Below are positions 14,965 to 40,844 of a stretch of 64,000 nt of DNA, piece after piece (position 1 is the first letter of the stretch; the number at the start of each line of letters is the position of its first letter). Below the pieces are notes generated by a model. It was given only the letters and a program-made list of their open reading frames with translations. It was not told the origin of the DNA and searched no databases. Source of the stretch: Thecamonas trahens ATCC 50062 (lineage: Eukaryota; Protista; Apusomonadida); the NCBI RefSeq assembly GCF_000142905.1, contig NW_013657660.1, positions 396,056-460,055 of the forward strand. Direction: 5' to 3'. The position numbers and the translations under genes were made by a program.

Positions 14965-16052
14965 TCATCTCCGCATGGGCAAGAGAACACCATGAATGTT
15001 TGGAATGACGCCTCCGCCTGCCAAGCAGACCTTGTGGAACATGCGCTCAAGCTCCATGTCGTTGCCGATGGCAAGTTTGACGTGGCGAGCGGTAAGGCGA
15101 CCAGCTTTGGTGTCGCGCATGGCATTGATGGCCAACTCGAGGACCTCACTCACCACAAACTCGACGGCGGCGGCGACTGCCGGCAGCGTCTCACGGTTGT
15201 AGATCGGGGCGAGGAGCTCCTGCGACTCGAAGACCTGCTTGACGTGGGAAAGATGGAGAAGGACTGGGACGCCTGAGCCAGCGGCGAGCGAGCTTAGTGT
15301 GCGTGCCACATCAGCTGCCGCATACTTGGCCACCTCGCCCGGGAAGTGCAGCTTGATGGCCGAGACGACGTCGTCGGCAATGAACGCAGAACGCTTGTTC
15401 ATCTTGGCCAACGGCACCATTTCCCGATACAAGCTGGCAATGATGTCGTCAATGAGATCAGCGAGCAGAGCAGCGGCTCCCTTGGACAGTGAGACTCTAG
15501 TGGGCGCGCTTGTCTCGGCAGCTGTGGCTCCTCCGGCCCCGGCCTGCGCTGTGGTTACCTTCTTGACCAGAGCACGCAAGCTCTTAATCCACGCTGCTGG
15601 CCTGTCGGCCGACTTGAAGACGCCGCCCGAGGCCTCGGCCACCCTGCGGGCTTCTGCCAGCGCTTCGACCTCCTCGGCGGTGTAGATGCCGTCGACAGAG
15701 CCCAGAACTGGAGCCACAAACGCCAGATCGTCGTCGTCCGGCCCGTCGCCTACGTCAGAGGCCGAGTCGCTCACTGCCCCTTCGTCGCCACCAGACGCCG
15801 ATGCCCCAGCCTGCGGGGAAAAAAAGCTTGAGATCCCAGTTTGCGCAGCCTGCCATTGTCCGTGTCCGTCCGCCGGGTGGCGCCTCCGTGAGTATGTCGT
15901 CGCGGGCAGGAGTAGACCTTCCATTGGCCAGTACGTGCGTGACGAGAGGGCACAGGGAAGGGAGGCAAGAAAAGAACGTTGATGCCCGTCACGCCCCCCT
16001 CCTCCCCCTCTCCCCCTTCCCCCCCTTCTCCTCCCCTAATTTGACTTACCAT
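14965..16052 (-). CDS. Single-chain histone H2B-H2A doublet; ATG-only exon 16050-16052, predicted intron 15850-16049
   Basis: H2B fold: SLSKGAAALLADLIDDIIASLYREMVPLAKMNKRSAFIADDVVSAIKLHFPGEVAKYA. It is followed in frame by an H2A fold and docking domain: AAAVEFVVSEVLELAINAMRDTKAGRLTARHVKLAIGNDMELERMF.KVCLAGGGVIPNIHGVLLP. Start context GCCATG|GTAAGT gives both a Kozak and a splice donor. Confidence 0.9.
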
Positions 16053-16278
16053 GGCTTGCTCACCAAAACAGCGTGGAGTGGCAATGGTCTCTCTGATGGT
16101 GCCTGCTGGTGCCGGCGCCGACAGCGAGATTCGACCGGGCTGGCGGCTGCCGAGCCATGGACGGTGGCGAGCCCACCGCCGTCGCCTCGGCCCTCTCCGC
16201 CGGCCTCGGCCCCCTCCGCCGGGTGAGGCCGACCACCGCTCTGCAGTGCTCTTGGCGGACAGGCGGAGGGGAGGCAAG

Positions 16279-19200
16279 ATGTTCCACGCACAGCAACCGA
16301 ACCCAAACAAACCACCGGACGAGAACTCGCTGCGGATTGGGGTGGCGTTTGCGCCGGTGGCGGAGGGTGAGCGCCTGCGGGAGCGCGGCCAACCGCCGTT
16401 TGTGACCCACACGACAGCGCAGCGGCAGGCGGCGTCTGCGGCAGACAGCGGGTCGTCGCGGGCAGCGGCAGCGGCAGCAGCGTCTGCAGCAGCGGCAGCG
16501 GTACCGGTCAACGCGGTGTCGGTCAAGGACCCGCTGGGCGAGGTGCCCGACACGCTGTTCTCGTTTGACGTGGTGGGCGAGGCGGGGACGCCGCTCAGCG
16601 AGCTGTACACCGAGTTGGTCAAGCCGTTGTCGTCGGCGGTGGTGGGCGGGACGTCGTGTGTGGCGTTTGTGTTTGGCCAGTCCGGCTCGGGACGGGCAAC
16701 AGCGCTGGTCGGCGGACTCGACGGCTCGCCGCGTGGCCTCGTTCAGCTGGCAGCCAGCGATCTGCTTGCCGAGATTGCCAAGTTCAAGGCGCAGCGGGCG
16801 ACGCTGCTGGCACGGTCTGGCTCGGCATCGTCACTTCTACTGGAAGATACCGAAGGAGTGTCGGCGACAGGGCGGATTCGGCGGGCGGGCTCGCGGTCGC
16901 TGCTGTCCTCGGCTTCGCTTTCGGACGTGCGAGCCATGACGCTCACGCTGTCGGCAATGGAGATCCACTGCGAGCACGTGTCCGACTTGCTCGAGCCGTA
17001 CATGGAGCCACTCGGGGCGGGCCTGGATCTCAGCCCGCCGACCGAAGCGAGTGAGTGCACGGCCCCGGCGCGCGACTTTGAGATGCGCAAGCCGCTTTCG
17101 GATCGGAGCGTTGCGGGCGGCCGGACGCTGGCGTCGGCCAAGTCGTCGACGAGTCTTTCGGCCGCGCGGCGGAGTATGTCGGGCACCCATGCCATGCGCT
17201 CGATTCGCAAGCAGCTCTCGGTGGCGTCGATGGCGACAAACAGCGAACTGCGGACGCCGCGGCGGATCTCGCCGGTCGAGCTTGCCGACTCGACCATTGC
17301 ATTCCCCAAGCTCGCCAAGGTTAAGTTGAGCTCGATGGCCGAGGCCGAGGCTGCGGTTCATGAGGCACTGGCCAACCGCGGGCTGCCGCTCTCGCGGACG
17401 TCTTACGACCGGCGCAATGCACACGCGGTCATCCAGCTCTCGCTCGAGCGCGAGCTCCTGCGCGACTCGACCGGCGACTCGGTCACCGTCTCGTCGTCGC
17501 TCTTCTTTGTTATTATGGCCGGCTCAGAGCTCCTGACCCAGGACCGGGCCAACTTTGCGCCGGAGCAAGCGTCAGCGTACAAGGTGCTCGACTCGACGTC
17601 GTCGATTCTGTCTGCGCTCTCGAAGCGGAACCTGACGTACGGCGCGTACGACGGCGCGCTTCTCACTCGCATGCTCCGGCCGTACCTCGGCCTGCAATCG
17701 CATGTGGCGGTGGTGGGTACCGTCCTTCCCTCGGTCTCCAACTTTGAAGAGTCGCTGGTCACGCTCCGGCTCTTGGGCGACATGCACAAGTCGATGCAGC
17801 ACAACACCGGGCTCGGAGCTACCGAGGCGCTCATTCGTGACAAGGATGCTACCATCCGACACCTCATCAAGGAGCTGGCCGAGGTGAAGGAGGATCTTGC
17901 GGTGGCCAAGGAGACAAACTTGAACCAGCGAATGCAGATCTCGCACTTGTCTCGGCCGGGCTCGCGCGGTGGGCGCGGCGGGCTCGGTGATGGGCTTGGT
18001 GGGCGCGGTGGCGGCGATAGCCTGCCGCGGTCCGATTCGGACGCGTCGGGCTCGTGGCTCGAGCCGACGCGCTCAAACCGGTCGCGGTCCGGTCGATCTG
18101 GTGGCGGTGGTGGCGGCTCGGCGTCGGTCGGGATCTCGCTCTCGGGTCCGGAGCCGTCGTTGCAGAGCTATGAGACGCTCAAGGATCTCATTGCGCAGCT
18201 GCAGGCGGAGAAAAAGTTGCTGTATGAGACGCTGCAGAAGCACAAGGCCCAGTTTGAGAGCGTCCAGCTCGAGATGCGGCGGAAAGAGGCCGAGATCTCA
18301 GTCGAGGTTGCCGGGTACAAGCGCTCGCTTCGGAGCGTTCAGGCCGAGCTCGACGAGTCAGTCCGCCGACACGAGGCTGAGACAGCGGCGCTTCACGAGA
18401 GCCACGCGCGCGATGTCCGCAAGCTGCTGGAGAACCACGCCAAGTCGCTGGAGCGGATGCGAGCGGCGCAGGAGGCCAAGCTCTCGTCGATTCCGCCGGC
18501 ATCGATGGCCGACGCGTCCAAGATTGATTATGTCGAGGCGCTGGTTAAGGCGCGGAGCGAGTACAAGGCTGCAGTGGGTGAGATGGAGGACGCGGCATCT
18601 CGCCAGGCGCGGGCGCTCGAAGACAAGATTGCGTCACTGCAGTCGGAGCTGACTTCGGTGACCAACTCGCTCGCGGCGTCACAGGCGAGTGTGGCGAGCG
18701 CCAAAGATGCGTACAAGCGTGACATGGGCCTTTTCCTTGACTACGCGACCACCTTTCAGCACGTGGTTGAGCGGGCGCTGGCGCGATCGTACCCGGTCGA
18801 CGCGCCGCAGCTCGAGTCGTTCTTCCTCCCCAAGGCTCTGACCTCGACGGATGAGCTTGTGCAGCGGCTGCCGAACCTGGTCACTGCGCTCAAGGGCGTT
18901 GTGACCAAACTGCACCCGCTCGACGTTGTGGCTGAGACCAAGATGGCGAGCCCGCGGCAGACGTCGTCGGCGCCGGACGCGCTTGATCTCCACGCCAACC
19001 TGCTGGCTATGGGTGACCGCGCGCTCCGTGCCGAAGTCCGCAAGCTTCGCAGCTACATTGCCGACAAGCGGGCGGGCGACGAGACAAAGTTTGCCGCCCG
19101 CGTCCGCGAGGCTGTCTTCAAGGAGCTCGCCTCGGATAAGACAGTGCAGTACATTGCGTCGCTGGAGGACTCGCTTGCTCGCCTCCGCAAGGACCTGGCC

Positions 19201-19395
19201 CGCGAGCGGTCCCGCCGGCGCGAAGTCGAGGTCTCCAGCCGCTACCGCCCGAGCGAAGGCCCCAACCGGCGCAGCCTTCGCTCGGCTCGCTCATCGCGGA
19301 GCCCGTCGCAAGCTCAGAGCCGCCTCGTCGACTCGGTTGTCGCCGCGCTGGTGGCCGAGGAGGACGTGTCAGGCCCCGCGCGCCGGCACAGCTGA
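16279..19395 (+). CDS. Divergent kinesin-like protein (N-terminal motor-like domain, long coiled coil)
   Basis: FSFDVV, VFGQSGSGRAT (P-loop), SAMEIHCEHVSDLL, HAVIQL, IMAGSE, LTRMLRPYLG and FEESLVTL appear in kinesin order, followed by a coiled coil. Start chosen at ATG 16279. Confidence 0.85.
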   Translation: MFHAQQPNPNKPPDENSLRIGVAFAPVAEGERLRERGQPPFVTHTTAQRQAASAADSGSSRAAAAAAASAAAAAVPVNAVSVKDPLGEVPDTLFSFDVVGEAGTPLSELYTELVKPLSSAVVGGTSCVAFVFGQSGSGRATALVGGLDGSPRGLVQLAASDLLAEIAKFKAQRATLLARSGSASSLLLEDTEGVSATGRIRRAGSRSLLSSASLSDVRAMTLTLSAMEIHCEHVSDLLEPYMEPLGAGLDLSPPTEASECTAPARDFEMRKPLSDRSVAGGRTLASAKSSTSLSAARRSMSGTHAMRSIRKQLSVASMATNSELRTPRRISPVELADSTIAFPKLAKVKLSSMAEAEAAVHEALANRGLPLSRTSYDRRNAHAVIQLSLERELLRDSTGDSVTVSSSLFFVIMAGSELLTQDRANFAPEQASAYKVLDSTSSILSALSKRNLTYGAYDGALLTRMLRPYLGLQSHVAVVGTVLPSVSNFEESLVTLRLLGDMHKSMQHNTGLGATEALIRDKDATIRHLIKELAEVKEDLAVAKETNLNQRMQISHLSRPGSRGGRGGLGDGLGGRGGGDSLPRSDSDASGSWLEPTRSNRSRSGRSGGGGGGSASVGISLSGPEPSLQSYETLKDLIAQLQAEKKLLYETLQKHKAQFESVQLEMRRKEAEISVEVAGYKRSLRSVQAELDESVRRHEAETAALHESHARDVRKLLENHAKSLERMRAAQEAKLSSIPPASMADASKIDYVEALVKARSEYKAAVGEMEDAASRQARALEDKIASLQSELTSVTNSLAASQASVASAKDAYKRDMGLFLDYATTFQHVVERALARSYPVDAPQLESFFLPKALTSTDELVQRLPNLVTALKGVVTKLHPLDVVAETKMASPRQTSSAPDALDLHANLLAMGDRALRAEVRKLRSYIADKRAGDETKFAARVREAVFKELASDKTVQYIASLEDSLARLRKDLARERSRRREVEVSSRYRPSEGPNRRSLRSARSSRSPSQAQSRLVDSVVAALVAEEDVSGPARRHS

Positions 19396-19547: not shown

Positions 19548-19720
19548 CTAAAACTACTAGAAACAAGTCATCCAATTTGAAACTATAGAGTTATATAAAA
19601 CTACAACTATAAAACTATTAAACCCAGAAAACATACACATTCTTTAAAAATCACATACAAATACAGTCACAAGTAATATAAAGACATTAAATTTGTTCAA
19701 TTATATATAATTTTTATTGA
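19548..19720. other. Strongly AT-rich island
   Basis: About 170 bp dominated by A/T (e.g. ttatataaaactacaactataaaactatta) in an otherwise GC-rich window. Confidence 0.9.
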
Positions 19721-19986
19721 AATGGCTTGTGGTTCACAGTGTCGTCCTCGTCGGCTGCCCTTGGCGAGACGAGACCGTCGTTTACGGCTTTGATGGGGTG
19801 TCTACCGCCCGCTTCGTGGTATGTGTAGCTGGCGTAGGGTGTGAACTATCTGTTGATGCGCAGGACTGGCTTGAGAACGGCTTGGATCCCATCATACACT
19901 GCAAAATGCCGTTTGTATCACCCCCCCCCCCCCCCCCCCTCCCCAGCTCTAACCCCCCCACCTCTCGCCACGCCAAAGCCACGCCC

Positions 19987-22125
19987 ATGCCGGCAACCAC
20001 AGCAGCAGTTCTGCTGGTGCTACTACTTGTTGCAGCGCCTGCAGTGACGGAGGCACGATTCGCTTTCGTCGTCCTCCACTACGAGGGCACTCCCGCCGAC
20101 GATGCGTACGTGCTTGGCACGCAGGTGACCATAGCCACGGTGCTGGAGCAGCACCCGGACCCGGCCATTGATGTGGTGGTACTGGCGGTCCACGGCGTGC
20201 GGCCCGAGGTCAAAGCCCGGTTTGCGGCGACCGATCCGAGGCGAGTGGTGGTGAGGGAGGTGCCGGACATCGGCAATCCGTTTGGCCACGCCAAGCCACG
20301 CTTCCGCAAGTCGCTCAACAAGCTGCACGCCTGGGCGCTGGTCGACTACGAGCGGGTCGTCTTTCTCGACTCGGACACGGTTGCGCTCCACGACATGTCG
20401 GCCCTCTTCCGCTGCGGTCACTTTTGCGTTGTCTACCTCAATCCGACCCGATTCCACACTGCGCTCATGGTCATCAAGCCCGACGTTACCGTCTTTAGCG
20501 ACATGCGCGCCGCCCTGCGCCGTTCACCGTCGGATCCAAACGCGCCGGCCTCGCACGACGGTGCCGACCAGGGCTTTCTCAACTGGTACTTTGCCCACGC
20601 ACGCGCCGGCCCGCTATTTGACGTCTACCTTGGCGGACCTGACGGCGGCGAGCGCTTCGAGCACCCGGCCATGCGGCTCACCATCGCCCACGCCATGCAC
20701 CACATCTACTTTTACGAGCACGGGACGTGGGACGGCTACCGCGTGGCAGGTGCACACCCTGAGGTAATTGCCGCCGATCCGCCGGCGCTCTCCATCTCCT
20801 TTCCCGGCCCGACGTGGACCAAGCCGTGGGACTGGCGCGGCTACCTGTTCTTTGTTGGTAACTGGCTCTGGGCCGATGCTCGTGCCCGGCTCCCTTCCGA
20901 CTTGGTATCACCGCCGCAAATTGCTAGTGCAGCGCTGGCCTACGTCGTGATTCCGGCGGCGCTTACGGGAGTCTTCTACGCTCTCGCCCCGGCGCATGGC
21001 GGCACCGGACTGAGCCCGGCCAGCGGCCGCGGTCTCGTCCTTGCCGGCACCGCCGTCACCGCCACGACGTACGGCGTGTACGTAGCTGCCGAGCTGGTCT
21101 CCCCATTTGCCCATCCCTACGCTGGCTTTGCCATTGTCCTCTCCACTGAGATGGTTGCTCAGCACGCCATCCGTCTTGTGGGCGTGTGGATGCTGACGGG
21201 GCATCCGCCGCGGGCTGTGCGCTCACCGCTGTGGCCCACCGTCCTCGCCCTCGCGGCGCGCCTTGCGGTCATCGGCATCGGTGCGTGTCTCTTTCACTTT
21301 GTGCTTAAGGTCCTGCTGCTTGGCGCAGGTATCCTCGCCTCGCTTGCGCTCTCGATAGCGTCGTGGGGCGTGGTCCGCGTTTCCTCGGCACCGGAAGCTC
21401 GCCCGCGCTGCGACGCGGCCAGCCCGCGCCCGTGGGGCTCGTTTCCGGCGTTTCTGACAGGCTTTGCCGTCTTTTGTGTTGGCTCGCTTGTCAACGTCAC
21501 GGGCATGTCGGTAGCCGAGCTGGCTGTCGACCTCGCGCGGCCGCCGCTTGTCGACGTTGTCCACGCACGCTGGCCTGATGCGCAGACTGGAGCCATCGGC
21601 GAGGTCCTTCTCCTCGCCGCCATTGTCACGCCTGTGTTCGTCGGAGTCGTTTACAACAGATTTGCAGATGGGTTTACCATTCTCGGTCGGGTATTTGCCA
21701 GCGTCGGCGCCGTGTACGTTGTCCGCGGAGTGGCCGTGGGCGTCACCGACATTCCGGTGCCGAACAACCACTGCCGCGCATGGGACGGGTGGCGGAGCGA
21801 CGACGACACCCATTGGTCGAACATAGCCGTCGGCCTGAGAACGCTCGGCACAGATCCGCACTGTGGTGATCTGATCCTCTCTGGCCACACCATCGTCGTC
21901 GTAGTCGCCACCGCTGTCATGGTCTCATACTACGCGCGGCTGGTGCCGACAACAACGCTAGCGTCATGCGCGCTTGCACTGGTGGCGAGCGCCTCATTTG
22001 TCCTCTCGCACAACCACTATACTGTCGACGTGTGGCTGGCAGCGGTTGTCACCACTCTGGTGTGGCACTCGCTCCCAGCGGTCTGGCCCTGGCCGGTCGG
22101 CGGCATGTTTCCTTCTTGCTCTTGA
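19987..22125 (+). CDS. Fusion protein: signal peptide + GT8 glycosyltransferase (PGSIP7/8-like, related to IPUT1) + TM block + IPC/sphingomyelin synthase (PAP2_C) domain
   Basis: GT8 motifs: HYEGTP.D, LNKLHAWALVDYERVVFLDSD (DxD), FRCGHFC..YLNP..FHT, DGADQGFLN, FPG..W.KPW.W. SMS/IPCS motifs: PPLVDVVH, R...VT.IPVPN.HC, CGDLILSGHT, HNHYTVDV. One uninterrupted ORF. Confidence 0.9.
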   Translation: MPATTAAVLLVLLLVAAPAVTEARFAFVVLHYEGTPADDAYVLGTQVTIATVLEQHPDPAIDVVVLAVHGVRPEVKARFAATDPRRVVVREVPDIGNPFGHAKPRFRKSLNKLHAWALVDYERVVFLDSDTVALHDMSALFRCGHFCVVYLNPTRFHTALMVIKPDVTVFSDMRAALRRSPSDPNAPASHDGADQGFLNWYFAHARAGPLFDVYLGGPDGGERFEHPAMRLTIAHAMHHIYFYEHGTWDGYRVAGAHPEVIAADPPALSISFPGPTWTKPWDWRGYLFFVGNWLWADARARLPSDLVSPPQIASAALAYVVIPAALTGVFYALAPAHGGTGLSPASGRGLVLAGTAVTATTYGVYVAAELVSPFAHPYAGFAIVLSTEMVAQHAIRLVGVWMLTGHPPRAVRSPLWPTVLALAARLAVIGIGACLFHFVLKVLLLGAGILASLALSIASWGVVRVSSAPEARPRCDAASPRPWGSFPAFLTGFAVFCVGSLVNVTGMSVAELAVDLARPPLVDVVHARWPDAQTGAIGEVLLLAAIVTPVFVGVVYNRFADGFTILGRVFASVGAVYVVRGVAVGVTDIPVPNNHCRAWDGWRSDDDTHWSNIAVGLRTLGTDPHCGDLILSGHTIVVVVATAVMVSYYARLVPTTTLASCALALVASASFVLSHNHYTVDVWLAAVVTTLVWHSLPAVWPWPVGGMFPSCS

Positions 22126-23095
22126 CCTCGGCCAGCTCCTTGGCCAGCCTCTCGGCCCGCGGATCGGCGACACCGGCTCCCGCCATCGCGTCAACCGCAG
22201 CCGCAACAATGTTGTGCGTCCAGATAACGTTGGCTCCAAGGAGCAGCGCCAGCAAAGCGAGTGCAACATATCCAACGTGGTGATCAAAGCCGGCTTGCAG
22301 ACACCCGAGTGATACACTGTACCGTTCGCTCACTACGTCTTTGAGCGCAAACACATCAAAGGCATCGGCGTCCCAGAACAAGACACCAAACGAGAGCAAG
22401 TGACCCAGCACAATAAACGCCGGGAAGATGACCATGCGAGTCACCATCCATACCGAGACAAAGGCACCAAACAGGAGGTGCACCAACCACGCCGGCACAA
22501 CCTCGAGGTACCGCACCACAATGGTGGCGTCCAGGATTGGATCGGCGGCGGCGTGGAGGAGCAGAACAAACACGCCATGGACAGACATGTGCGCCGCCGT
22601 ACTGAGAACAACCAGCACAAGTGTCACAGCATGATGCGCCACCATCAGCCCCCAGTCCCACTCGAGCGTATTGCCGACCAAAGCGTCTGTCCCCATGCCG
22701 CCCAGCTCGCTCGAGAACCACACCATCGCCGCCAGCAGTGCCGGGTCAACATCAACAGTTCGACTAGTCTCGTTCCGCCGCAGCGCGTCCGCGCACCGCG
22801 CCGACTCTACGTCCCACACACCAAATACAGAAGCATCAACAGCGGCGGCGACACTCTCCGTCGGCACCAGCGCAGCCTCAGCCCACAGCCGACGCGCACT
22901 GGAGAGCGCCAGCACCAGGACCACCATCGAGCCCAGCCACATCCAGCTGTGCCTCGCTACTGCCAGCTGCCGCGACCTGCGTTCCACCCCGCCATACTCG
23001 GCCCAGCGACGCAAGCCTGCCACCGCCACCGCCCGCACCGCCACCCCTCCCGCCGCCCCTGCCGCCCACCACACTGCCGCTTCGTCGACTCGCAT
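22049..23095 (-). CDS. Lag1/TLC-domain ceramide synthase-like protein
   Basis: Lag1p-like motif DWGLMVAHHAVTLVLVVLS.....VHGVFVLLLHAAADPILD, then F..F..VW..TRM..FP, L..L...NVIW...I and C-terminal DPRAE (cf. DxRSD). First ATG at 23095; the frame is open upstream to 23182. Confidence 0.8.
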   Translation of the reverse strand: MRVDEAAVWWAAGAAGGVAVRAVAVAGLRRWAEYGGVERRSRQLAVARHSWMWLGSMVVLVLALSSARRLWAEAALVPTESVAAAVDASVFGVWDVESARCADALRRNETSRTVDVDPALLAAMVWFSSELGGMGTDALVGNTLEWDWGLMVAHHAVTLVLVVLSTAAHMSVHGVFVLLLHAAADPILDATIVVRYLEVVPAWLVHLLFGAFVSVWMVTRMVIFPAFIVLGHLLSFGVLFWDADAFDVFALKDVVSERYSVSLGCLQAGFDHHVGYVALALLALLLGANVIWTHNIVAAAVDAMAGAGVADPRAERLAKELAEVKSKKETCRRPARARPLGASATPEW

Positions 23096-23231
23096 CCGCC
23101 TTGTGTCCACCGTCTCGTTCGATCGCGCCGTCGCCTTGACTTGGTCACGGACGAGGAACTCCGCCTGTAGGCGTTCCAGCACAGATGCTCGGCCGGGCCG
23201 AGGTCTTTGACCACACCTGCAAGAGAGTGGG

Positions 23232-23414: not shown

Positions 23415-26400
23415 TCACACCACGCTATCCAACCCGCCGCCACCACCGCTCTCTATCATCTCGGCAGAACCCAGCATCGATCGCTCGCTCAGGATCGGGC
23501 TCTGACTGGTGCCCAGCGGGCCCGATCCGACATAGCTCACTGTGGCCTGCGACGCAAGCGGCGTTCCTACGTCGCTCATCAGGTTGTCGAGGTGAACGTC
23601 GTTGGTCATGGTGGTCAGGTCTTCGCGGGCAAGGTCAGGATCAAGGCCGGCCATGTCGGCGTCAAACCCGGCCTCAGCCCGCTTCTCGCGGCGCGCGATG
23701 AGCCAAAAGTCGGCCATCACGCCGCCAATGATGAGCGCAACATTGCTGACGATGCCGATATGAATGCCGGCGCTCCGCAGCCCGCCGTCATCAAAGGTGC
23801 CCGAGTACAGCACTAGCGTCGTTGCCGCAAGAACCGCCACAGAGAGTCCGTTGTGGAGTGGCGAGCCGTACGGCCTCTGAAAGATGAGCTGTCCAAGAGC
23901 AGAGACAAGAACAACTACACCAGCGTTGGCCTTGCTCTTATCAGTAAAAAACAGCGCCATGCAGAGGACGACTCCAAGTTTGCGCGCCATGATCGCCGTC
24001 TCAAACCACCACGCTGTCGGCACAAATCGGCCGACTAGAAAGCCGAACTTGATCGTAAACGTGAGTTCGTCTCCCAGCACCTCCCGCTGCCGGCGTAGGA
24101 CCAGCCAGACTACCGCAGGCACACCGATGGCGTAGCACAACACTGCCGCCATGGCCACCGGAAACAGCCCCACCCACCATGCGCTGTTGTAGCAGCTCCG
24201 CGCCGGATCGGCATCGAGCACCCACCGCCCACCCACCTCGCGGCGACACCCAAACGGCGCCATGGCCGCCCGCGCCAGTGGCAGATACAGCAGCACCAGC
24301 AGCTGGAACAGCGTCCGCCCGCACCCGCCCATCAGCTGCGCCAAGTTATCTGCCCGCCGCAGTTTGCCAGGCAGCAGCATCAGCGGCGCTACAGCCACCA
24401 CAGCTGCAGCCGCAAAGACAGGCAGTGCAAGAGTGAGGCCCCACTTGAGCGCCCATGTGTCGGTCCCGGCCGCGGCCGCGCACTCGGGGCTGGTCAGCTC
24501 AAAATCGACGTTGACCGCGCTCGCCACGTCAAAGTACACTTGCGCCAGTCCGCCCCACGCAAGATCGAGCTTGCCGTACATTGCGCTGATCTGCAGCGCG
24601 TTGAGCCCGATCATCGCCGCGGCAAACTTGTACCGCAGGCTCTGGGCAAGGTTGAACATCAGCAGCGCAGCCGTGATCACCAGCAGTCCAACAACCAGAC
24701 ACGCCACAATCGCAGCATTGCGCCCAGCTGCACACTTGCGGCAGCTCGACCCGAGTCGGTAGTAGTTGGGGGCGCATTGGGCGCACAGCCGCGCCGTGTA
24801 ACCCGGTGCGCACTGCCCGTCGAGCAAGCAAGCCGATGCCGTCGGGCATGCCACAAACAGCGTCGGGTCTGTCTCGTCCGGAAAGAAGCCCGGTCCCGAG
24901 ACAGGCTGAGCACTCCCACCGGTGCACACACCGCCGCTAGGACACGGCAAGCAGCCGTCCGCACCGATGACTCCGTCCTGGACCCAAAAGTTGCGCTCGC
25001 ACGAGCACGCGCCCATCGCGTCGCCGCCGAGCCGCACTGCGTTGGCTGGACAGGCCGACAACGCCACGCACTGTGCCAGCGGCCCGGCGCTTTGCTGCGT
25101 CCCCTCACCACACTCGGCACAGACGACAACGCTCGTCGCAGACCCGCTCCCAGCCACTGTGCCCGATCCGGCCCGACATCCGGTGATGTTGACTGTAGCG
25201 CGAAGCGCCGGCACTGCCAGCCCACGGCTGCTCACGCCACCAGCCTCAATCATGGTGTGCGCCGTGAGCGGAATCAGGCTCGCTCCGCCGCCGTCGCCAA
25301 TTGCGCTTGCCACAATCTGGACGGTCAGGTCCGGCAGCGAGACCGCCGTCGACTCGAGCGCCATCGAGCTCGACCCGACCGTGGCCAGGGCGGGATCGGC
25401 CTCATACCGCATCCGCAGCACAATTCGCGGCTCAACCAGCGGCTGGCCGAGCCAATCCACCCCGCGCACTGCGCCAGACGCCGACAAGCCCGGCTCGAGC
25501 GATCCGCTCGGCCCACTCGCCCACGCCATCGACGCTAGTGGCCCGGCCATCACCGCCGTCCCAAGCGTGCCAAACGCTGCAGCGTCGGCACGCAACCACG
25601 GCAGCTTGGCTCGGTCGCTGCGCCCAACCTGGGAGAGGGCAACGCCTGCGCCAGCGCACAAAAACACGTCATTTGCCCGCCGATCCGCGCCACTCACGCC
25701 GCCACTCATCAGCGTCCCAGAGCCTACAAGACTCACCCGCGCCCCGCACACCAGAGCATTGCCGCCGAGGTAGTTGGCCTCCGACATCTCAAGCCGCACA
25801 TCCACTAGCACAATCGTCGGCGGAGCAGGCCCGCTCAGCGGTCCTTCACCGCTGGCGACAGGAACCTCGACTGAGGTCTGGGCCGATGCAAGCTCGACGT
25901 GAAGGTCCGCGGCAACCACCGCAAGCCCGCCACCCGAGCCGCCGGCGCTGTTGCGGCGAATGCTTGTGCCGTCCAGCTGGACTGTTGCGGGCGCCACAAT
26001 CAAGACTCCGCCACCGAGCCCAGCCAGCGCCACAGTGTTGTCCTCGATCGTCGTCGCGCCACGGAGCGTCAGGCTCGCGCCGTTTGCCGCATACAGCCCG
26101 CCGCCGCCGTTGATCGCGGTCGAGCTGGTGATGAGCGAGTCTGCCACAAGTAGCGACGCACCGGTGGCAACCGTCACGCTCCCGCCGAGATTGCCTGCCT
26201 CGTTGTCACGAAACGTGCACGCCTCGAGCGTTGCAGACGATCCCACACCACGCACGTGAAGCGCACCGCCCGAGCTCGCTGAGCTCGCCTTGAACGTCGA
26301 CCGGCGCGCCTCGAGTGACGCCCCGCTCAGCACCAAGACAGCGCCGCCGCGTCCAACAGAAAAGTCCGACTCGTCGGTCCGCGGCGCGGCCGAACATCCC

Positions 26401-29258
26401 TCAAACGTCATGCCGTCAAGGACCAAGCGCGCACCCGAGCCGCCAACTCTTACACCCGGCCCACCAATGAGCGACGTCCGTGCCACACCTGTACCACGCA
26501 CCGTCATGTTGGCGAGGACAAGCTCGCCGATCGACATCCCGGAGGCATCCGGTCCGACGTGGAACAAGACCCCAGCGCTGCCGCACTCAAACACCGTTCC
26601 GGCACTTCCTGCAATCGTCATGGCATTCGAGACAAGGGCGTGCGAGTCTCGCGAGCAGTTGTACTGCGCCGGTGGCAAGTTGACCGTGTCATGGGTGCAG
26701 CGCGATGTGGTGCGGAGACTTGCGCGCACGCACTCGAATGAGCCGCGGCTTCCTGTCTCGCACGCCTTGTCACGAGTCCGGAGGCCACGATGCGTCGGCG
26801 CAAAGACGTGCATTGGCCCGCGAAGCAGGCGTGCCACCCAACCAAACTGGCCGAGCGATCCCGAGCTGGTAATCACGTCAATGTCGCCGTCACCGTCAAC
26901 GTCATCGAGCGAGGCAAAGGTCGTCATTGATGCCGACGCCAGAGTAAGAACTGCACCAAAAGTGCCACTGCCCGAGTTGAGCGCCATGTCGACGTCAGAG
27001 TTGGACATGATCGCAACAAGATCGACATGGCCATCGCCGTCCATGTCTCCGAGCGAGAGCTGGATGGCACCCGCAGCCTTGAGCGTAGCCACTGCCGTCG
27101 GCGTGTTGAACGTGCCGGGCACGCCACCCTGGGTGATGCGCTTGACTACAGTCGAGCTAGTGTCCATGACGAGGATGTCGTTCCGACCATCACTATCGAT
27201 ATCGTCGACCAAAAGCTGCTCGGTCAGACCCGTCGGCGCGTAGATGACAGCGCTCGCGGCAAAGCTCCTACCCGAAGGAAACTCGTTCTCGAACCAGGTG
27301 AGCTCGTCGGTCATGGTGTCGATGACAACCAAATCCGGCGCGCCATCGGAGTTGATATCGCGTAGAACCACAACATCCGCGCCGACGCCCAGTACCGAGG
27401 TAGGCAACGGGAAACTGCCATCTCCGGCATTGAGCGCCCAGACCAAGGTGTCAGACTGGCTCACAGCCACAAAGTCGCGCGCTCCGTCACCGTTGACGTC
27501 GACAACGTCAAAGTGGGCATATGGCGGCGACGGGGTGGTGACCACCGGCTGGCGGGGGCCAAATCGTCCAACGCCGTTGTTGGCCGCCCACACTGGGCCG
27601 CTCGAGACCCATGCAACAACATCGGTGTCACCGTCGCCGTCCATGTCCACAGCCTTGATGTAGCGGACAGCCTGGGCGTCGAAAACTGGCTGGGCCGGGC
27701 CGAAGTTGCCGGCGCCGTCAAAGTTGGCGAACCAGAGTGCGCCAGAACTGGTGCCAACAACAACATCGACGAAGCCATCGGCATTGATGTCGGCGGGCGC
27801 ATGCTCAAAGCTGTCAAGCATGCCACTTGCTGCCACATGCACGGTGGCGCTCGGCGCGACCGCGCTCGAAGTGGGCCACCGCTGCAAGACAGTGTCGTCG
27901 AGCGAGACAAAGTCGAGGCTCGGGCCACTTGCGTAGTTGCCGGCGCAGACATGAAGGAAGCCCAAGCCGAGTGTGCCGACTACCAAGCGCGGGCCAAATC
28001 GCCCACCACCATCGACGTTTTCATGCCAGACCACGTCCTTGGTCTCGACGTGGGTGAGCGCAATGTCGAGGTCGCCGTCGGCGTCGATGTCGGCGAGGGT
28101 GAGGTCGCCAGGAGAGTCGACGGCGGCCTCGATGGCCCGCGGCGGGTAAAACCCTCCTGCACCATCGGAACTTTGGAGCCAGCCAAAGGCTGACTGCCAT
28201 GAAAAGGCAAAGACAAGGTCGATCATGCCGTCGCCGTTGACATCGCCGGCGCGGACATGGCTCGACGAAAAGACCGAGCCGGCGCCGAGCGAGACCAGGT
28301 TGGCCGGAACTCCGCTCGTCCCGTCTTTCATCCATGTCAGCGTGCCGTCGGCGACATCGCTCCATAGAATGTCATTGATCGCGTTGCCGTCGATGTCGAC
28401 AATCAAGACCGATTGCAGGTACGAGCCATAGGTGGTGATGGTGGCGGCAGAAGCAAACGAACCTGCGCCGTCGGTGTTCTCCATCCAGAACATCAGGTGG
28501 CGGGAATCGTGGGTAGTCACCACGATGTCGTCGTCGCCGTCCGAGTCGACGTCACCGACTGCCACTTCATCGAGATCAAACTCCGAGGTCGAGTGGACGT
28601 TGACGCCGGCGGTAAAGCTCGGGCCTGCGGTCTGGCGGAACCAAAGAACCTCGTCGAGGGTGGCTACCGCAACATCAACGAGCGAGTCGCTGGAGAGCTT
28701 CCCGATCGCCACACCGACAATGTTGGCGATACCAGTGCCAACGGTGACAGAAGAGAAGCCGCCGACACCGTTTCCGCGGAACAGCTGCACATCGCTGCTA
28801 CCACGCCGCGCGACGACAACGTCGTCGACGGCGTCGCTGTCCACTCGGCCGCAGATCACGCCCCTTCCAGACGAAACGGCTACGATGGGCACCGGCGAGA
28901 GCGGCACCTCGGGCTTGCACTGCGGAATGTTTGGTCTACCCAGAACCGGGTCCAGTAGCACATCGACCGTCGCCGCTTGCGTGCCGAGCGGCTCCACCAC
29001 CAATGTCACCACCGCTGCCGCCAGCAACGCCCATACCGCCAGCCGGCGCCAGCCGTCATTGCAACGCCCAGCGCCCCGAATCAGCCTCCCACTGTTCGCT
29101 TCCCAGCCCATCACTCGCCTGCATGGGTCAGCTCCTGCGCCACTGCCCGTCATAGTCTGCACTCGGACCCTGGCCCGCTTCAAGTGAAGTGTACCAGAAT
29201 TGCCGCTCGTTGCGCCTGCTCCCATTTCGTGCCGCATTTCGTCAAATCTTACCCGCAC
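23415..29258 (-). CDS. Giant adhesion-receptor-like protein: FG-GAP/VCBS repeats, GGA-type beta-helix repeats, Cys-rich repeats, C-terminal ~7TM domain (paralogue A)
   Basis: Hydrophobic signal; many D(V/I)(D/N)GDG.D motifs; F..N.A...GG repeats; C..C..G Cys-rich units; hydrophobic helices with LYLP, C...W and FLVGRF...WWFE...M.RK. True ATG is uncertain (29237, 29153 or 29111). Confidence 0.88.
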   Translation of the reverse strand: MRVRFDEMRHEMGAGATSGNSGTLHLKRARVRVQTMTGSGAGADPCRRVMGWEANSGRLIRGAGRCNDGWRRLAVWALLAAAVVTLVVEPLGTQAATVDVLLDPVLGRPNIPQCKPEVPLSPVPIVAVSSGRGVICGRVDSDAVDDVVVARRGSSDVQLFRGNGVGGFSSVTVGTGIANIVGVAIGKLSSDSLVDVAVATLDEVLWFRQTAGPSFTAGVNVHSTSEFDLDEVAVGDVDSDGDDDIVVTTHDSRHLMFWMENTDGAGSFASAATITTYGSYLQSVLIVDIDGNAINDILWSDVADGTLTWMKDGTSGVPANLVSLGAGSVFSSSHVRAGDVNGDGMIDLVFAFSWQSAFGWLQSSDGAGGFYPPRAIEAAVDSPGDLTLADIDADGDLDIALTHVETKDVVWHENVDGGGRFGPRLVVGTLGLGFLHVCAGNYASGPSLDFVSLDDTVLQRWPTSSAVAPSATVHVAASGMLDSFEHAPADINADGFVDVVVGTSSGALWFANFDGAGNFGPAQPVFDAQAVRYIKAVDMDGDGDTDVVAWVSSGPVWAANNGVGRFGPRQPVVTTPSPPYAHFDVVDVNGDGARDFVAVSQSDTLVWALNAGDGSFPLPTSVLGVGADVVVLRDINSDGAPDLVVIDTMTDELTWFENEFPSGRSFAASAVIYAPTGLTEQLLVDDIDSDGRNDILVMDTSSTVVKRITQGGVPGTFNTPTAVATLKAAGAIQLSLGDMDGDGHVDLVAIMSNSDVDMALNSGSGTFGAVLTLASASMTTFASLDDVDGDGDIDVITSSGSLGQFGWVARLLRGPMHVFAPTHRGLRTRDKACETGSRGSFECVRASLRTTSRCTHDTVNLPPAQYNCSRDSHALVSNAMTIAGSAGTVFECGSAGVLFHVGPDASGMSIGELVLANMTVRGTGVARTSLIGGPGVRVGGSGARLVLDGMTFEGCSAAPRTDESDFSVGRGGAVLVLSGASLEARRSTFKASSASSGGALHVRGVGSSATLEACTFRDNEAGNLGGSVTVATGASLLVADSLITSSTAINGGGGLYAANGASLTLRGATTIEDNTVALAGLGGGVLIVAPATVQLDGTSIRRNSAGGSGGGLAVVAADLHVELASAQTSVEVPVASGEGPLSGPAPPTIVLVDVRLEMSEANYLGGNALVCGARVSLVGSGTLMSGGVSGADRRANDVFLCAGAGVALSQVGRSDRAKLPWLRADAAAFGTLGTAVMAGPLASMAWASGPSGSLEPGLSASGAVRGVDWLGQPLVEPRIVLRMRYEADPALATVGSSSMALESTAVSLPDLTVQIVASAIGDGGGASLIPLTAHTMIEAGGVSSRGLAVPALRATVNITGCRAGSGTVAGSGSATSVVVCAECGEGTQQSAGPLAQCVALSACPANAVRLGGDAMGACSCERNFWVQDGVIGADGCLPCPSGGVCTGGSAQPVSGPGFFPDETDPTLFVACPTASACLLDGQCAPGYTARLCAQCAPNYYRLGSSCRKCAAGRNAAIVACLVVGLLVITAALLMFNLAQSLRYKFAAAMIGLNALQISAMYGKLDLAWGGLAQVYFDVASAVNVDFELTSPECAAAAGTDTWALKWGLTLALPVFAAAAVVAVAPLMLLPGKLRRADNLAQLMGGCGRTLFQLLVLLYLPLARAAMAPFGCRREVGGRWVLDADPARSCYNSAWWVGLFPVAMAAVLCYAIGVPAVVWLVLRRQREVLGDELTFTIKFGFLVGRFVPTAWWFETAIMARKLGVVLCMALFFTDKSKANAGVVVLVSALGQLIFQRPYGSPLHNGLSVAVLAATTLVLYSGTFDDGGLRSAGIHIGIVSNVALIIGGVMADFWLIARREKRAEAGFDADMAGLDPDLAREDLTTMTNDVHLDNLMSDVGTPLASQATVSYVGSGPLGTSQSPILSERSMLGSAEMIESGGGGGLDSVV

Positions 29259-40711: not shown

Positions 40712-40844
40712 GACGCTTCCCCCCTCCTCTCTCTCTCCCCCCTTTCCTCGTCTTTTCCCTTCTCATCCTTTCCATAGGTCTTTGCCACGCTCCGCAAGGC
40801 CTCTTCTATCTCCTTCCCTTCCTTCTTCTTGCTCGCCTCTCGTC

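What the first reader, a model, noticed from the sequence alone, without database searches (positions are those of the whole stretch)
19987..22125. GT8 glycosyltransferase fused to an IPC/sphingomyelin synthase: Rosetta-stone clue for the PGSIP7/8 family
Seen: one ORF with a signal peptide, a lumenal GT8 domain (DxD at ~20368), a TM block and an SMS/IPCS domain with intact catalytic motifs CGDLILSGHT (21862-21891) and HYTVDV (~22015-22032). Known: in plants IPCS makes inositolphosphoceramide and the GT8 enzyme IPUT1/PGSIP6 adds GlcA. The motifs here (Y.GTP.D, LNKL.AW, NP..FHT, FPG..W.KPW) look closer to PGSIP7/8, whose acceptor I do not know to be established. Inference: a bifunctional enzyme channelling ceramide to a phospho-headgroup ceramide and then to a glycosylated product, implying that PGSIP7/8 act on such lipids.
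Basis: partly seen in the sequence, partly recalled or inferred. Interest (0 to 1): 0.9.

Follow-up and report, generated by a model that had tools for sequence, protein, structure and literature searches.

The report
Glycosyltransferase fused to sphingolipid headgroup synthase
A marine single-celled eukaryote encodes one membrane protein that joins a plant-PGSIP7/8-like sugar transferase to a sphingomyelin/IPC-synthase-like enzyme, next to a ceramide-synthase-like gene; this rare natural fusion gives a testable clue that this orphan sugar-transferase family decorates phospho-sphingolipid headgroups.

Summary
Window 19987-22125 (+) is one uninterrupted 712-aa ORF with a hydrophobic N-terminus, a GT8 domain (DSD at 20368-20376), five TM helices, a 24-aa linker and a six-TM SMS/IPCS-type PAP2_C domain with intact D3 and D4 motifs.

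The fusion looks real:
- A 52%-identical, fully collinear 758-aa orthologue lies on a marine metagenome contig.
- There is no stop codon.
- The window has no Met from which a six-TM SMS protein could start separately.

It is rare. In an exhaustive search of 1.84 billion representative proteins, only these two cover both domains.

In both loci an orthologous, divergent TLC (ceramide-synthase-like) gene is the immediate neighbour.

The GT8 part sits in a well-supported protist clade joined to the clade holding plant PGSIP7/8. It shares their (S/T)FP…KPW motif in place of the canonical GT8 histidine. It is not a strict PGSIP7/8 orthologue, and I could not obtain a named IPUT1 sequence to place in the tree.

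With five TM helices between the domains, both active sites fall on the lumenal side.

Function, headgroup and sugar are inferred, not shown.

The scan had already noted this same stretch (s1-756530), but nothing like it on other DNA.

Verdict: a new architecture built from known enzyme families, and a useful hypothesis generator.

The parts
19987..22125 (+). Complete CDS (712 aa plus stop) of the GT8-TM-SMS fusion protein
   Evidence: The ORF is uninterrupted. It is identical to the called protein P0001. It is collinear with the 758-aa orthologue P0002 over residues 26-700.
19987..20058 (+). Hydrophobic N-terminus (residues 1-24), either a signal peptide or a signal anchor
   Evidence: Kyte-Doolittle peak of 2.26. 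It is a helix at residues 2-15 in the AF2 model. P0002 and the paralogue L008 also have hydrophobic N-termini.
20059..20901 (+). GT8 (GT-A fold, retaining) catalytic domain, residues 25-305
   Evidence: Searches support the domain and fold. 38 of 42 family-conserved columns are kept. It is 64% identical to P0002.
20368..20376 (+). DxD motif (DSD, D128/D130)
   Evidence: Located. The column is invariant across 82 standalone relatives.
20800..20829 (+). FPGPTWTKPW motif, the PGSIP7/8-type replacement of the canonical GT8 H-x-x-G-x-x-KPW
   Evidence: In the alignment, the fusion pair, protist group B and plant PGSIP8 all have (S/T)(F/Y)P…KPW. Only a nematode/Corallochytrium clade keeps the His.
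20911..21369 (+). Five-helix TM block (residues 309-461), equivalent to the C-terminal PGSIP7_C domain of PGSIP proteins
   Evidence: AF2 helices at 309-333, 344-370, 377-404, 416-434 and 438-461. The Atlas structural alignment of residues 1-467 to the PGSIP8/PGSIP7_C cluster gives TM 0.67. Relatives carry 4-6 hydrophobic segments after the GT8 domain.
21370..21441 (+). Arg-rich linker (residues 462-485), predicted cytosolic, poorly conserved
   Evidence: It is 20% identical to P0002, whose linker is longer in the same frame and carries extra DPVSE-type repeats. It has 4 Arg. It contains no Met.
21442..22083 (+). SMS/IPCS-type six-TM PAP2_C domain (residues 486-699)
   Evidence: Pfam PF14360 at 1.5e-17. 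It aligns with SMSr 8ijq across TM1-TM6. The Atlas structural search gives TM 0.8 to SMS1-type clusters.
21541..21555 (+). D1-like motif PPLVD (SMS family consensus PLPD) in the first lumenal loop
   Evidence: It aligns to PPLPD of SMSr. P0002 has PPLFD.
21862..21891 (+). D3 motif CGDLILSGHT (catalytic His)
   Evidence: It is invariant in P0002.
22015..22032 (+). D4 motif HYTVDV (catalytic His and Asp)
   Evidence: P0002 has HYVVDV.
22049..23182 (-). Adjacent convergent TLC-domain (ceramide-synthase-like) gene, whose non-conserved 3' tail overlaps the fusion CDS by 77 nt
   Evidence: Pfam PF03798 at 1.5e-14. It is 41% identical to the TLC gene next to the fusion on L001. It aligns with the Lag1p motif of human CerS6; the HH pair is kept and LHD..D is changed to LHA.AD in both orthologues.

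Best explanation
The gene encodes a two-enzyme Golgi/ER membrane protein.

Shown:
- It is a single ORF, conserved in two lineages.
- It consists of a complete PGSIP7/8-type protein (N-terminal hydrophobic signal, GT8 domain, five-helix membrane block) joined by a short Arg-rich linker to a complete six-TM SMS-family phospho-headgroup transferase.
- The family-conserved catalytic residues of both halves are kept.

Inferred:
- The SMS-type half transfers a phospho-alcohol headgroup from a glycerophospholipid to ceramide at the lumenal leaflet.
- The headgroup is most probably phosphoinositol. Phosphocholine and phosphoethanolamine offer no hydroxyl to glycosylate.
- The tethered lumenal GT8 half then adds the first alpha-linked sugar from a UDP-sugar to that headgroup. 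This is the job that IPCS and IPUT1 do as two separate proteins in plants.
- An odd number (5) of helices between the halves puts both active sites on the same lumenal side.
- The neighbouring divergent TLC gene plausibly supplies or remodels the ceramide.
For: Architecture and motifs.

The fusion is real:
- The orthologue P0002 is collinear and 52% identical: GT8 64%, TM block 47%, SMS 50%. The linker is only 20% identical, differs in length, and stays in frame.
- There is no stop codon.
- In the window the first Met after the TM block lies inside SMS TM1.
- A contig from a separate run of the organism is identical across 21177-21871, which spans the junction.

Rarity: only P0001 and P0002 cover both domains in the exhaustive search. 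Other long hits lack PAP2_C.

Catalytic competence:
- 38 of 42 GT8 family-conserved columns are kept, including K112, D128/D130, the DGADQGF motif and KPW.
- The SMS D2-D4 motifs and the His-His-Asp triad are kept.

Topology: five plus six helices, with Arg-rich cytosolic loops at 405-415 and 462-485.

Sphingolipid link:
- An orthologous TLC gene is adjacent in both loci although its side and orientation differ.
- That TLC has only a very weak match (E 0.0025) among the nine other G000 TLC loci compared.

Pathway context in the genome:
- myo-Inositol-phosphate synthase and a UDP-glucose-dehydrogenase-type gene are present.
- No AUR1-type IPC synthase scores above its cut-off.

Precedent: plant IPUT1, a GT8 with C-terminal TM helices, glycosylates IPC (PMC8890496).
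Against: - No activity, lipid or transcript data exist for this protein.
- RNA-library contigs cover only 21686-22048, and they could be DNA carry-over.
- The canonical third metal ligand (His before KPW) of GT8 enzymes is absent. This is true of the whole PGSIP7/8-type group, whose activity has never been shown.
- The PAP2_C family also includes PDCT, which acts on diacylglycerol rather than ceramide.
- The genome has five further PAP2_C loci and a standalone PGSIP-like gene, so the fusion is not the only possible route.
- Standalone relatives of the GT8 half show no sphingolipid neighbours.
- The TLC neighbour has an altered Lag1p motif and may not be a ceramide synthase.
Confidence: 0.5

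Rival explanations
1. Both halves are active enzymes, but the pathway is not ceramide-based. The PAP2_C half would act like PDCT or another headgroup exchanger on diacylglycerol or glycerophospholipids. The GT8 half would glycosylate a glycerolipid (for example PI, or the DAG released) or a membrane-proximal glycan.
For: - The PAP2_C family includes plant PDCT. The Atlas neighbours of the C-terminal part include clusters carrying AtPDCT1_2.
- G000 paralogues and viral homologues match PF24788 weakly.
- The acceptor of the PGSIP7/8-type clade is unknown (PMC12971971).
Against: - The fusion itself gave no PF24788 match.
- It aligns end to end with SMSr, including the D1-D4 motifs.
- The conserved neighbour is a TLC/CerS-like gene, which points to ceramide.
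Confidence: 0.2
2. Only one half is catalytic. The other serves as a membrane anchor, substrate sensor or regulator, in the way SMSr is chiefly a ceramide sensor. Alternatively the His-less GT8 is a lectin-like or pseudo-enzyme module.
For: - The canonical Mn-ligand His is missing from the GT8 half.
- The D1 motif is PLVD rather than PLPD, and one of the two D2 arginines is lost.
- The fusion pair sits on a long stem in the GT8 tree (1.04 substitutions per site), which indicates accelerated change.
Against: - DxD, the conserved Lys, the DQG motif and KPW are kept in both orthologues, as is the His-His-Asp triad of the SMS half.
- Loss of the His is shared by about 70 standalone relatives that otherwise conserve the active site, which argues for a functional variant rather than decay.
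Confidence: 0.15
3. The fusion is a gene-model artefact. Two adjacent genes are read as one ORF because stop codons are rare in this 63% GC genome.
For: - In the same genome a 982-aa open frame joins PAP2_C with PIH1 domains, which may be such a read-through.
- No RNA contig bridges the junction in a library known to be RNA.
Against: - The same continuous frame is found in an orthologue only 52% identical, across a linker that differs in length and sequence.
- The window has no Met between the end of the TM block and the middle of SMS TM1.
- The number of helices fits a seamless topology.
- Both gene callers produced one protein.
Confidence: 0.05

Closest known systems
Plant PGSIP7 / PGSIP8 (GT8 subfamily PGSIP-C; Pfam PGSIP7_C)
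   Same: - Same build: N-terminal signal, GT8 domain and about five C-terminal TM helices.
- Shared (S/T)FP…KPW motif in place of the canonical His motif, and a shared CG.FC motif.
- They are the nearest named plant proteins (E 9e-30, 36% identity).
- The Atlas structural match covers residues 1-467.
- The clade holding the fusion joins the plant clade at 98/94 support.
   Different: - The fusion's GT8 lies in a separate protist clade (99/97 support) and is not an orthologue.
- It carries an extra SMS-type enzyme at its C-terminus.
- PGSIP7/8 have no established activity; only a pgsip7 salt phenotype has been reported (PMC12971971).
Arabidopsis IPUT1 / PGSIP6 / MOCA1 (IPC glucuronosyltransferase, GT8)
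   Same: It is a GT8 with C-terminal TM helices that adds the first sugar to inositol-phosphoceramide immediately after IPCS. This is the reaction logic proposed here (PMC8890496).
   Different: - It is a standalone protein.
- The literature places it with the GUX branch, apart from PGSIP7/8 (PMC12971971).
- No IPUT1-named protein appeared among the named hits, and I could not put one in the tree.
Sphingomyelin synthase family (SMS1, SMS2, SMSr; plant and kinetoplastid IPC synthases; PDCT)
   Same: - A six-TM core with D1-D4 motifs and an intact His-His-Asp triad.
- It aligns with the solved SMSr structure over the whole core.
   Different: - Its N-terminal partner is a complete glycosyltransferase rather than a SAM domain or nothing.
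- D1 is PLVD rather than PLPD.
- Headgroup specificity is unknown.
Ceramide synthases (Lag1/CerS, TLC domain), for the neighbouring gene
   Same: It has a TLC domain. It aligns with the CerS6 Lag1p motif and keeps the HH pair.
   Different: - The first Asp of LHD..D is Ala in both orthologues.
- It has only a very weak match (E 0.0025, to L012) among the nine other G000 TLC loci compared.
- The TM region N-terminal to the motif is not matched by the Pfam model.
Giant-virus-like SMS-type gene followed by a GT32 (Sur1/Csh1-type) glycosyltransferase gene (L024, L031-L035)
   Same: An SMS-type PAP2_C enzyme is paired directly with a DxD glycosyltransferase from the family that mannosylates IPC in yeast.
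   Different: - These are two overlapping genes, not one protein.
- The glycosyltransferase family is different (GT32, not GT8).
- All contigs belong to a single virus lineage.

Membership tests
GT8 glycosyltransferases | GT-A fold similar to glycogenin and LgtC | tested here: met
   The AF2 model has pLDDT above 90 over residues 25-300. Foldseek matches glycogenin and Gat1 at E 1e-10, TM 0.7-0.8 by target. phmmer against PDB gives 1.5e-12.
GT8 glycosyltransferases | DxD motif plus the conserved Lys and D-x-x-D-Q-G sugar/nucleotide-binding residues | tested here: met
   D128-S-D130, K112 and D191-G-A-D194-Q-G-F are all present. The corresponding columns are 93-100% conserved in 82 relatives.
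GT8 glycosyltransferases | Third metal-ligand His in H-x-x-G-x-x-KPW | tested here: not met
   The query has S-F-P-G-P-T-W-T-KPW. The His is also absent in P0002, in protist group B and in plant PGSIP8. That this His is the Mn ligand comes from my own knowledge of the glycogenin and LgtC structures.
GT8 glycosyltransferases | Pfam PF01501 above its gathering score | tested here: not met
   22.0 bits against a cut-off of 24.3. The genome-frame search gave 24-24.9 bits. Plant PGSIP8 (P0016) itself scores nothing, so the model is insensitive to this subfamily.
PGSIP7/8-type (PGSIP-C) subfamily | GT8 domain followed by the PGSIP7_C multi-TM domain | tested here: met
   There are five helices at 309-461. 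The Atlas structural alignment of residues 1-467 to the PGSIP8/PF28460 cluster gives TM 0.67. The PF28460 model itself is not in the local Pfam copy.
PGSIP7/8-type (PGSIP-C) subfamily | Phylogenetic placement with plant PGSIP7/8 | tested here: inconclusive
   In the careful tree the fusion is in protist group B (99/97). Group B joins the clade with plant PGSIP8, Chara and a lycophyte at 98/94, to the exclusion of the Galdieria/Protostelium and His-keeping clades. The root is assumed, and no named IPUT1 or GUX sequence is in the tree.
SMS / IPCS family (PAP2_C) | Pfam PF14360 above its gathering score | tested here: met
   64.3 bits against a cut-off of 27.
SMS / IPCS family (PAP2_C) | D3 (C-G-D-x3-S-G-H-T) and D4 (H-Y-T-x-D-V) motifs with the His-His-Asp triad | tested here: met
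   CGDLILSGHT and HYTVDV align to the same motifs of SMSr 8ijq. They are conserved in P0002.
SMS / IPCS family (PAP2_C) | D1 (PLPD) and D2 (RR…R…T) motifs and a six-TM core | tested here: inconclusive
   D1 is PLVD, and PLFD in P0002. D2 keeps one of the two leading Arg, the central Arg, the Thr and the VP. Six helices are predicted, but with low pLDDT.
SMS / IPCS family (PAP2_C) | Transfer of a phospho-headgroup from a glycerophospholipid to ceramide | not testable with these tools
   This needs an enzyme assay or lipidomics.
Ceramide synthase (neighbouring gene) | Lag1p motif with HH and the D-x-x-D acidic residues | tested here: inconclusive
   The HH pair is present. LHD.AD reads LHA.AD in both orthologues.

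The most novel reading that the evidence does not exclude
PGSIP7/8-type, His-less GT8 proteins are a eukaryote-wide family of lipid-headgroup glycosyltransferases that act directly on the product of SMS-type phospho-ceramide synthases. They occur in plants, red algae, Amoebozoa and many marine protists. On this reading, the fusion plus its TLC neighbour is a compact three-activity module for a so far undescribed glycosyl-phospho-ceramide in marine protists. Plant PGSIP7 and PGSIP8 would then be missing GIPC- or IPC-modifying enzymes.
Probability: 0.3. Interest if true: 0.8.

Novelty: new variant of a known kind. Interest (0 to 1): 0.62.

Why it matters
PGSIP7 and PGSIP8 are conserved in plants and have relatives across eukaryotes, yet they still have no known substrate (PMC3797821; PMC12971971, 2026).

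A natural fusion of a near relative to an SMS/IPC-synthase-type enzyme, kept next to a ceramide-synthase-like gene in two lineages, is classical Rosetta-stone evidence. It turns the open question into concrete experiments:
- sphingolipid headgroup profiling of pgsip7 pgsip8 plants;
- assays with IPC-type acceptors.

It also points to an unexplored glycosylated phospho-sphingolipid in marine protists. And it offers a single polypeptide with which to study substrate hand-over between a headgroup synthase and the first glycosyltransferase.

The evidence is comparative only, and the GT8 is a sister-group member rather than an orthologue. It is a strong lead, not a result.

Tried and rejected
- **Word-index search with the SMS domain alone.** No hit at E <= 0.001. 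This says nothing about absence.
- **Looking for more fusions.**
  - The metagenome scan with junction and SMS patterns gave only one weak standalone viral homologue.
  - The viral scan gave seven standalone SMS-like genes and no GT8 fusion.
  - Long hits of the representative search lack PAP2_C.
- **Naming an IPUT1/PGSIP6 anchor for the tree.**
  - Thirty representatives were looked up in three calls, and none carried that name.
  - I first suspected that the His-keeping clade was IPUT1-like. It turned out to consist of Corallochytrium and multi-exon genes from two NCBI assemblies that I believe are nematodes.
  - That guess was dropped.
- **Gene-neighbourhood support from standalone relatives.** P0005 and P0006 have no sphingolipid genes nearby. 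Within G000 the standalone GT8, PAP2_C and TLC loci share no contig except this one.
- **RNA proof of one transcript.** Only short metatranscriptome contigs over 21686-22048 and over the TLC gene were found. The bridging contig comes from a run of unknown type.
- **Viral or GEVE origin of the cluster.** This was prompted by nearby histone-fusion notes and by viral PAP2_C and GT8 clusters. The window genes are ordinary cellular ones (E2F/DP, mitochondrial carrier, kinesin, C2CD3, GFAT, TPT), and GC content is even. Rejected.
- **Is the genome Corallochytrium?** No identical match to its protein.
- **Complex prediction and a second structure job were not used.** I make no binding claim that would depend on them.
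Full report
**What is there**

Window 19717-22125 (+) is one open frame. The ATG at 19987 gives a 712-aa protein, the same product a gene caller recorded (P0001).

Pfam gives PAP2_C at 1.5e-17. Glyco_transf_8 comes in just under its threshold at 22 bits against 24.3. The GT8 assignment is nevertheless firm:
- Sequence matches to solved structures of Gat1 (1.5e-12) and glycogenin.
- An AlphaFold2 model with pLDDT above 90 over residues 25-300.
- Foldseek matches to glycogenin and Gat1 at TM 0.7-0.8 by target.

The Pfam model is simply insensitive to this subfamily. Plant PGSIP8 itself scores nothing.

The C-terminal 230 residues align with human SMSr (8ijq) across the whole six-helix core. The correspondences are D1 PPLVD against PPLPD, D2 largely kept, D3 CGDLILSGHT against CGDYMFSGHT, and D4 HNHYTVDV against HEHYSIDV.

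**Is the fusion real?**

One full-length relative exists. P0002 is 758 aa and sits on a 3974-bp Tara marine metagenome contig (L001). It is collinear over residues 26-700 at 52% identity. By region the identities are GT8 64%, TM block 47% and SMS domain 50%.

The 24-residue linker is only 20% identical. In P0002 it is longer, in the same frame, and carries extra DPVSE-type repeats. A non-conserved, length-variable linker that stays in frame in two diverged genomes is what a translated linker looks like. It is not what an intergenic spacer looks like.

There is no stop codon. In the window the first Met after the TM block lies inside SMS helix 1, so a separate six-TM SMS protein could not start there.

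A contig from a separate run labelled with the same organism is identical over 21177-21871, which bridges the junction. Its library type is unknown.

Metatranscriptome contigs match 21686-22048 and part of the TLC gene with 0-1 differences. They do not bridge the junction and could be DNA carry-over. The single-transcript test therefore remains open. I put the artefact reading at about 5%.

As a caution, the same genome has a 982-aa open frame joining PAP2_C and PIH1 domains, which may be a read-through.

**How rare is it?**

An exhaustive HMMER pass over 1.84 billion cluster representatives gave 1435 hits at E <= 0.001. Only P0001 and P0002 cover both domains. Any fusion would have ranked near the top because its two domain scores add.

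The long hits (P0056, P0014, P0119, P0067, P0072, P0148 and others) have no PAP2_C. Pattern scans of JGI metagenomes and IMG/VR found no further fusion. Full-text searches found no paper describing it. The refutation condition 'already widely annotated' is not met.

**What is the GT8 half?**

It is a whole PGSIP-type protein, not just a catalytic domain. The model shows five TM helices after the GT8 domain: 309-333, 344-370, 377-404, 416-434 and 438-461. Nearly all relatives carry 4-6 hydrophobic segments in the same place. The ESM Atlas aligns residues 1-467 structurally to the 'PGSIP8 / PGSIP7_C' cluster at TM 0.67 (a lead only).

The nearest named plant proteins are grass PGSIP7/8 at E 9e-30 and 36% identity.

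I built a careful maximum-likelihood tree of 53 GT8 domains. I rooted it on the only clade that keeps the canonical GT8 histidine. In that tree:
- The fusion pair (100/100, long stem of 1.04) lies in a protist-rich clade I call 'group B' (99/97).
- Group B also holds the genome's own standalone paralogue L008, Balamuthia and many marine metagenome proteins.
- Group B joins the clade containing plant PGSIP8, a lycophyte, Chara and Cochliopodium at 98/94.
- A Galdieria/Protostelium clade and the His-keeping clade fall outside that union.

A diagnostic character agrees with the tree. The fusion, group B and plant PGSIP8 all read (S/T)(F/Y)P-x5-KPW. The other clade reads I-H-Y-T-L-G-P-x-KPW.

The protein is a sister-group member, not an orthologue.

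Two limitations apply here:
- I could not obtain any sequence named IPUT1/PGSIP6.
- The root is an assumption.

Indirectly, no IPUT1-named protein appeared among the hits that carried names. A 2026 paper places MOCA1/IPUT1 with the GUX branch and PGSIP7/8 on a separate branch (PMC12971971).

**Are the enzymes likely active?**

Of 42 columns that are at least 85% conserved in 82 standalone relatives, the query keeps 38 and P0002 keeps 39. The kept positions include K112, D128/D130, DGADQGF and KPW (the positions printed there are three too high).

The histidine that is the third metal ligand in glycogenin and LgtC (my own knowledge) is missing. It is missing family-wide, in proteins that otherwise keep the site. 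I read this as a variant metal site rather than decay, but it is a real caveat.

In the SMS half, the His-His-Asp triad and the D2-D4 motifs are invariant between the two orthologues.

**Topology (inferred)**

With a lumenal GT8 domain, five helices bring the chain to the cytosol at the Arg-rich linker (4 Arg). The cytosolic loop at 405-415 also carries 2 Arg. The SMS core then starts from the cytosol, as in the canonical SMS topology. This places D1 (loop 515-533), the acidic loop 586-627 with D3, and D4 in the lumen.

An even number of helices would have put the two active sites on opposite sides. The published description of PGSIP7 as having six helices in total (PMC12971971) fits one N-terminal helix plus five C-terminal ones.

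The SMS half of my model has low confidence (pLDDT 35-55). Its helix count rests mainly on the alignment to SMSr.

**Context**

The next gene, convergent at 22049-23182 (-), encodes a TLC-domain protein (PF03798, 1.5e-14). Its non-conserved tail overlaps the fusion CDS by 77 nt. On L001 a 41%-identical TLC gene is also the immediate neighbour, but upstream and divergent. Adjacency has therefore survived a rearrangement.

The genome has about 15 TLC loci. Among the nine other G000 TLC loci compared, this one had only a very weak match (E 0.0025, to L012), so the two neighbours are each other's orthologues. The protein aligns with the Lag1p motif of CerS6. It keeps the HH pair but reads LHA.AD for LHD.AD in both lineages.

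The rest of the window is ordinary cellular DNA: E2F/DP, mitochondrial carrier, kinesin, C2CD3, GFAT and a TPT-type transporter. GC content is even. I found no sign of a viral insert.

The 28.7-Mb genome also contains:
- a standalone PGSIP-like gene (L008, E 9.5e-66 to the GT8 half);
- five further PAP2_C loci, the closest being L003;
- an inositol-phosphate synthase;
- a UDP-glucose-dehydrogenase-type gene.

It has no AUR1-type IPC synthase above threshold. It is a GC-rich, gene-dense marine or estuarine protist and is not Corallochytrium.

**Mechanism proposed, with odds**

Two things are shown: the architecture, and the conservation of both active sites.

The rest is inferred (about 0.5 for the chain as a whole). 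The SMS-type half makes a phospho-headgroup ceramide at the lumenal leaflet, and the tethered GT8 half adds the first alpha-linked sugar.

If the GT8 acts on the product of its partner, the headgroup must carry a hydroxyl. That favours phosphoinositol and an IPCS-like activity over phosphocholine or phosphoethanolamine (about 0.4 for IPC specifically).

Rivals:
- a glycerolipid pathway, PDCT-like (0.2);
- one half non-catalytic or regulatory (0.15);
- a gene-model artefact (0.05).

**Comparison and novelty**

In logic the protein works like plant IPCS plus IPUT1 joined in one chain. By membership it is an SMS-family enzyme fused to a PGSIP7/8-type GT8.

This is a new domain architecture built from known families, so I class it as a new variant of a known kind. 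It gives Rosetta-stone-type support to the idea that the orphan PGSIP7/8-type family works on phospho-sphingolipid headgroups, but only by extrapolation from a sister clade.

The scan had already noted this same stretch as a 'two-gene, three-enzyme cluster' (s1-756530) and had noted the altered Lag1p motif (s1-756895). I confirmed both observations. Nothing comparable was on record for other DNA.

**Procedural notes**

No spliced model was used.

Noticed in passing
L024:5524-7036 (JGI contig Ga0209500_10000699); also L031-L035 (IMG/VR): In one lineage of virus-like contigs, a 239-aa SMS/PDCT-type PAP2_C gene is followed by a GT32 Gly_transf_sug glycosyltransferase (the family of the yeast IPC mannosyltransferases). 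The two genes overlap by 50 nt. The pair is conserved at 86-100% identity on six contigs.
   Followed up: partly
G000:C13, locus L006:979-3207 (open frame of 982 aa): One open frame holds a PAP2_C/PDCT-like domain (residues 140-207 of the translated part) and PIH1 plus PIH1_CS domains (residues 407-706). It is either another odd fusion or two genes with no stop between them in this GC-rich genome.
   Followed up: no
G000:C34, locus L008:1258-2937 (+): This is a standalone 560-aa PGSIP-type GT8 with a Gly/Ala/Asp-rich insert after its signal peptide. It is the closest in-genome relative of the fusion's GT8 half (E 9.5e-66). The genome has no orthologue of the plant-type PGSIP7/8 clade or of the His-keeping clade.
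   Followed up: partly
window 14965-15924 (-): This 319-aa ORF has histone-fold and H2A C-terminal matches only in its last ~80 residues by Pfam. It lies head-to-head with a kinesin-like gene (16051-19395).
   Followed up: no
window 23415-29258 (-), 40782-44827 (+), 44752-49062 (+): These are several very large FG-GAP/VCBS-repeat plus beta-helix plus DUF7630 proteins with C-terminal multi-TM regions (1947 aa, 937 aa, 1436 aa). They look like a paralogous receptor-like family clustered in the window.
   Followed up: no
window 19906-19986: An in-frame upstream ATG at 19906 would add 27 residues (a Pro-rich stretch followed by RHAK) before the hydrophobic segment. That would turn the signal peptide into a type-II signal anchor. 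The poly-pyrimidine tract at 19912-19944 attracts many unrelated low-complexity RNA contigs.
   Followed up: no
P0133, P0148, P0166 (loci L036, L037): Animal (Mesorhabditis by name; the other two from assemblies I take to be nematodes) and Corallochytrium proteins combine a GT8 domain that keeps the canonical His with about five C-terminal TM helices. They form their own well-supported clade, and I know of no function for them.
   Followed up: partly
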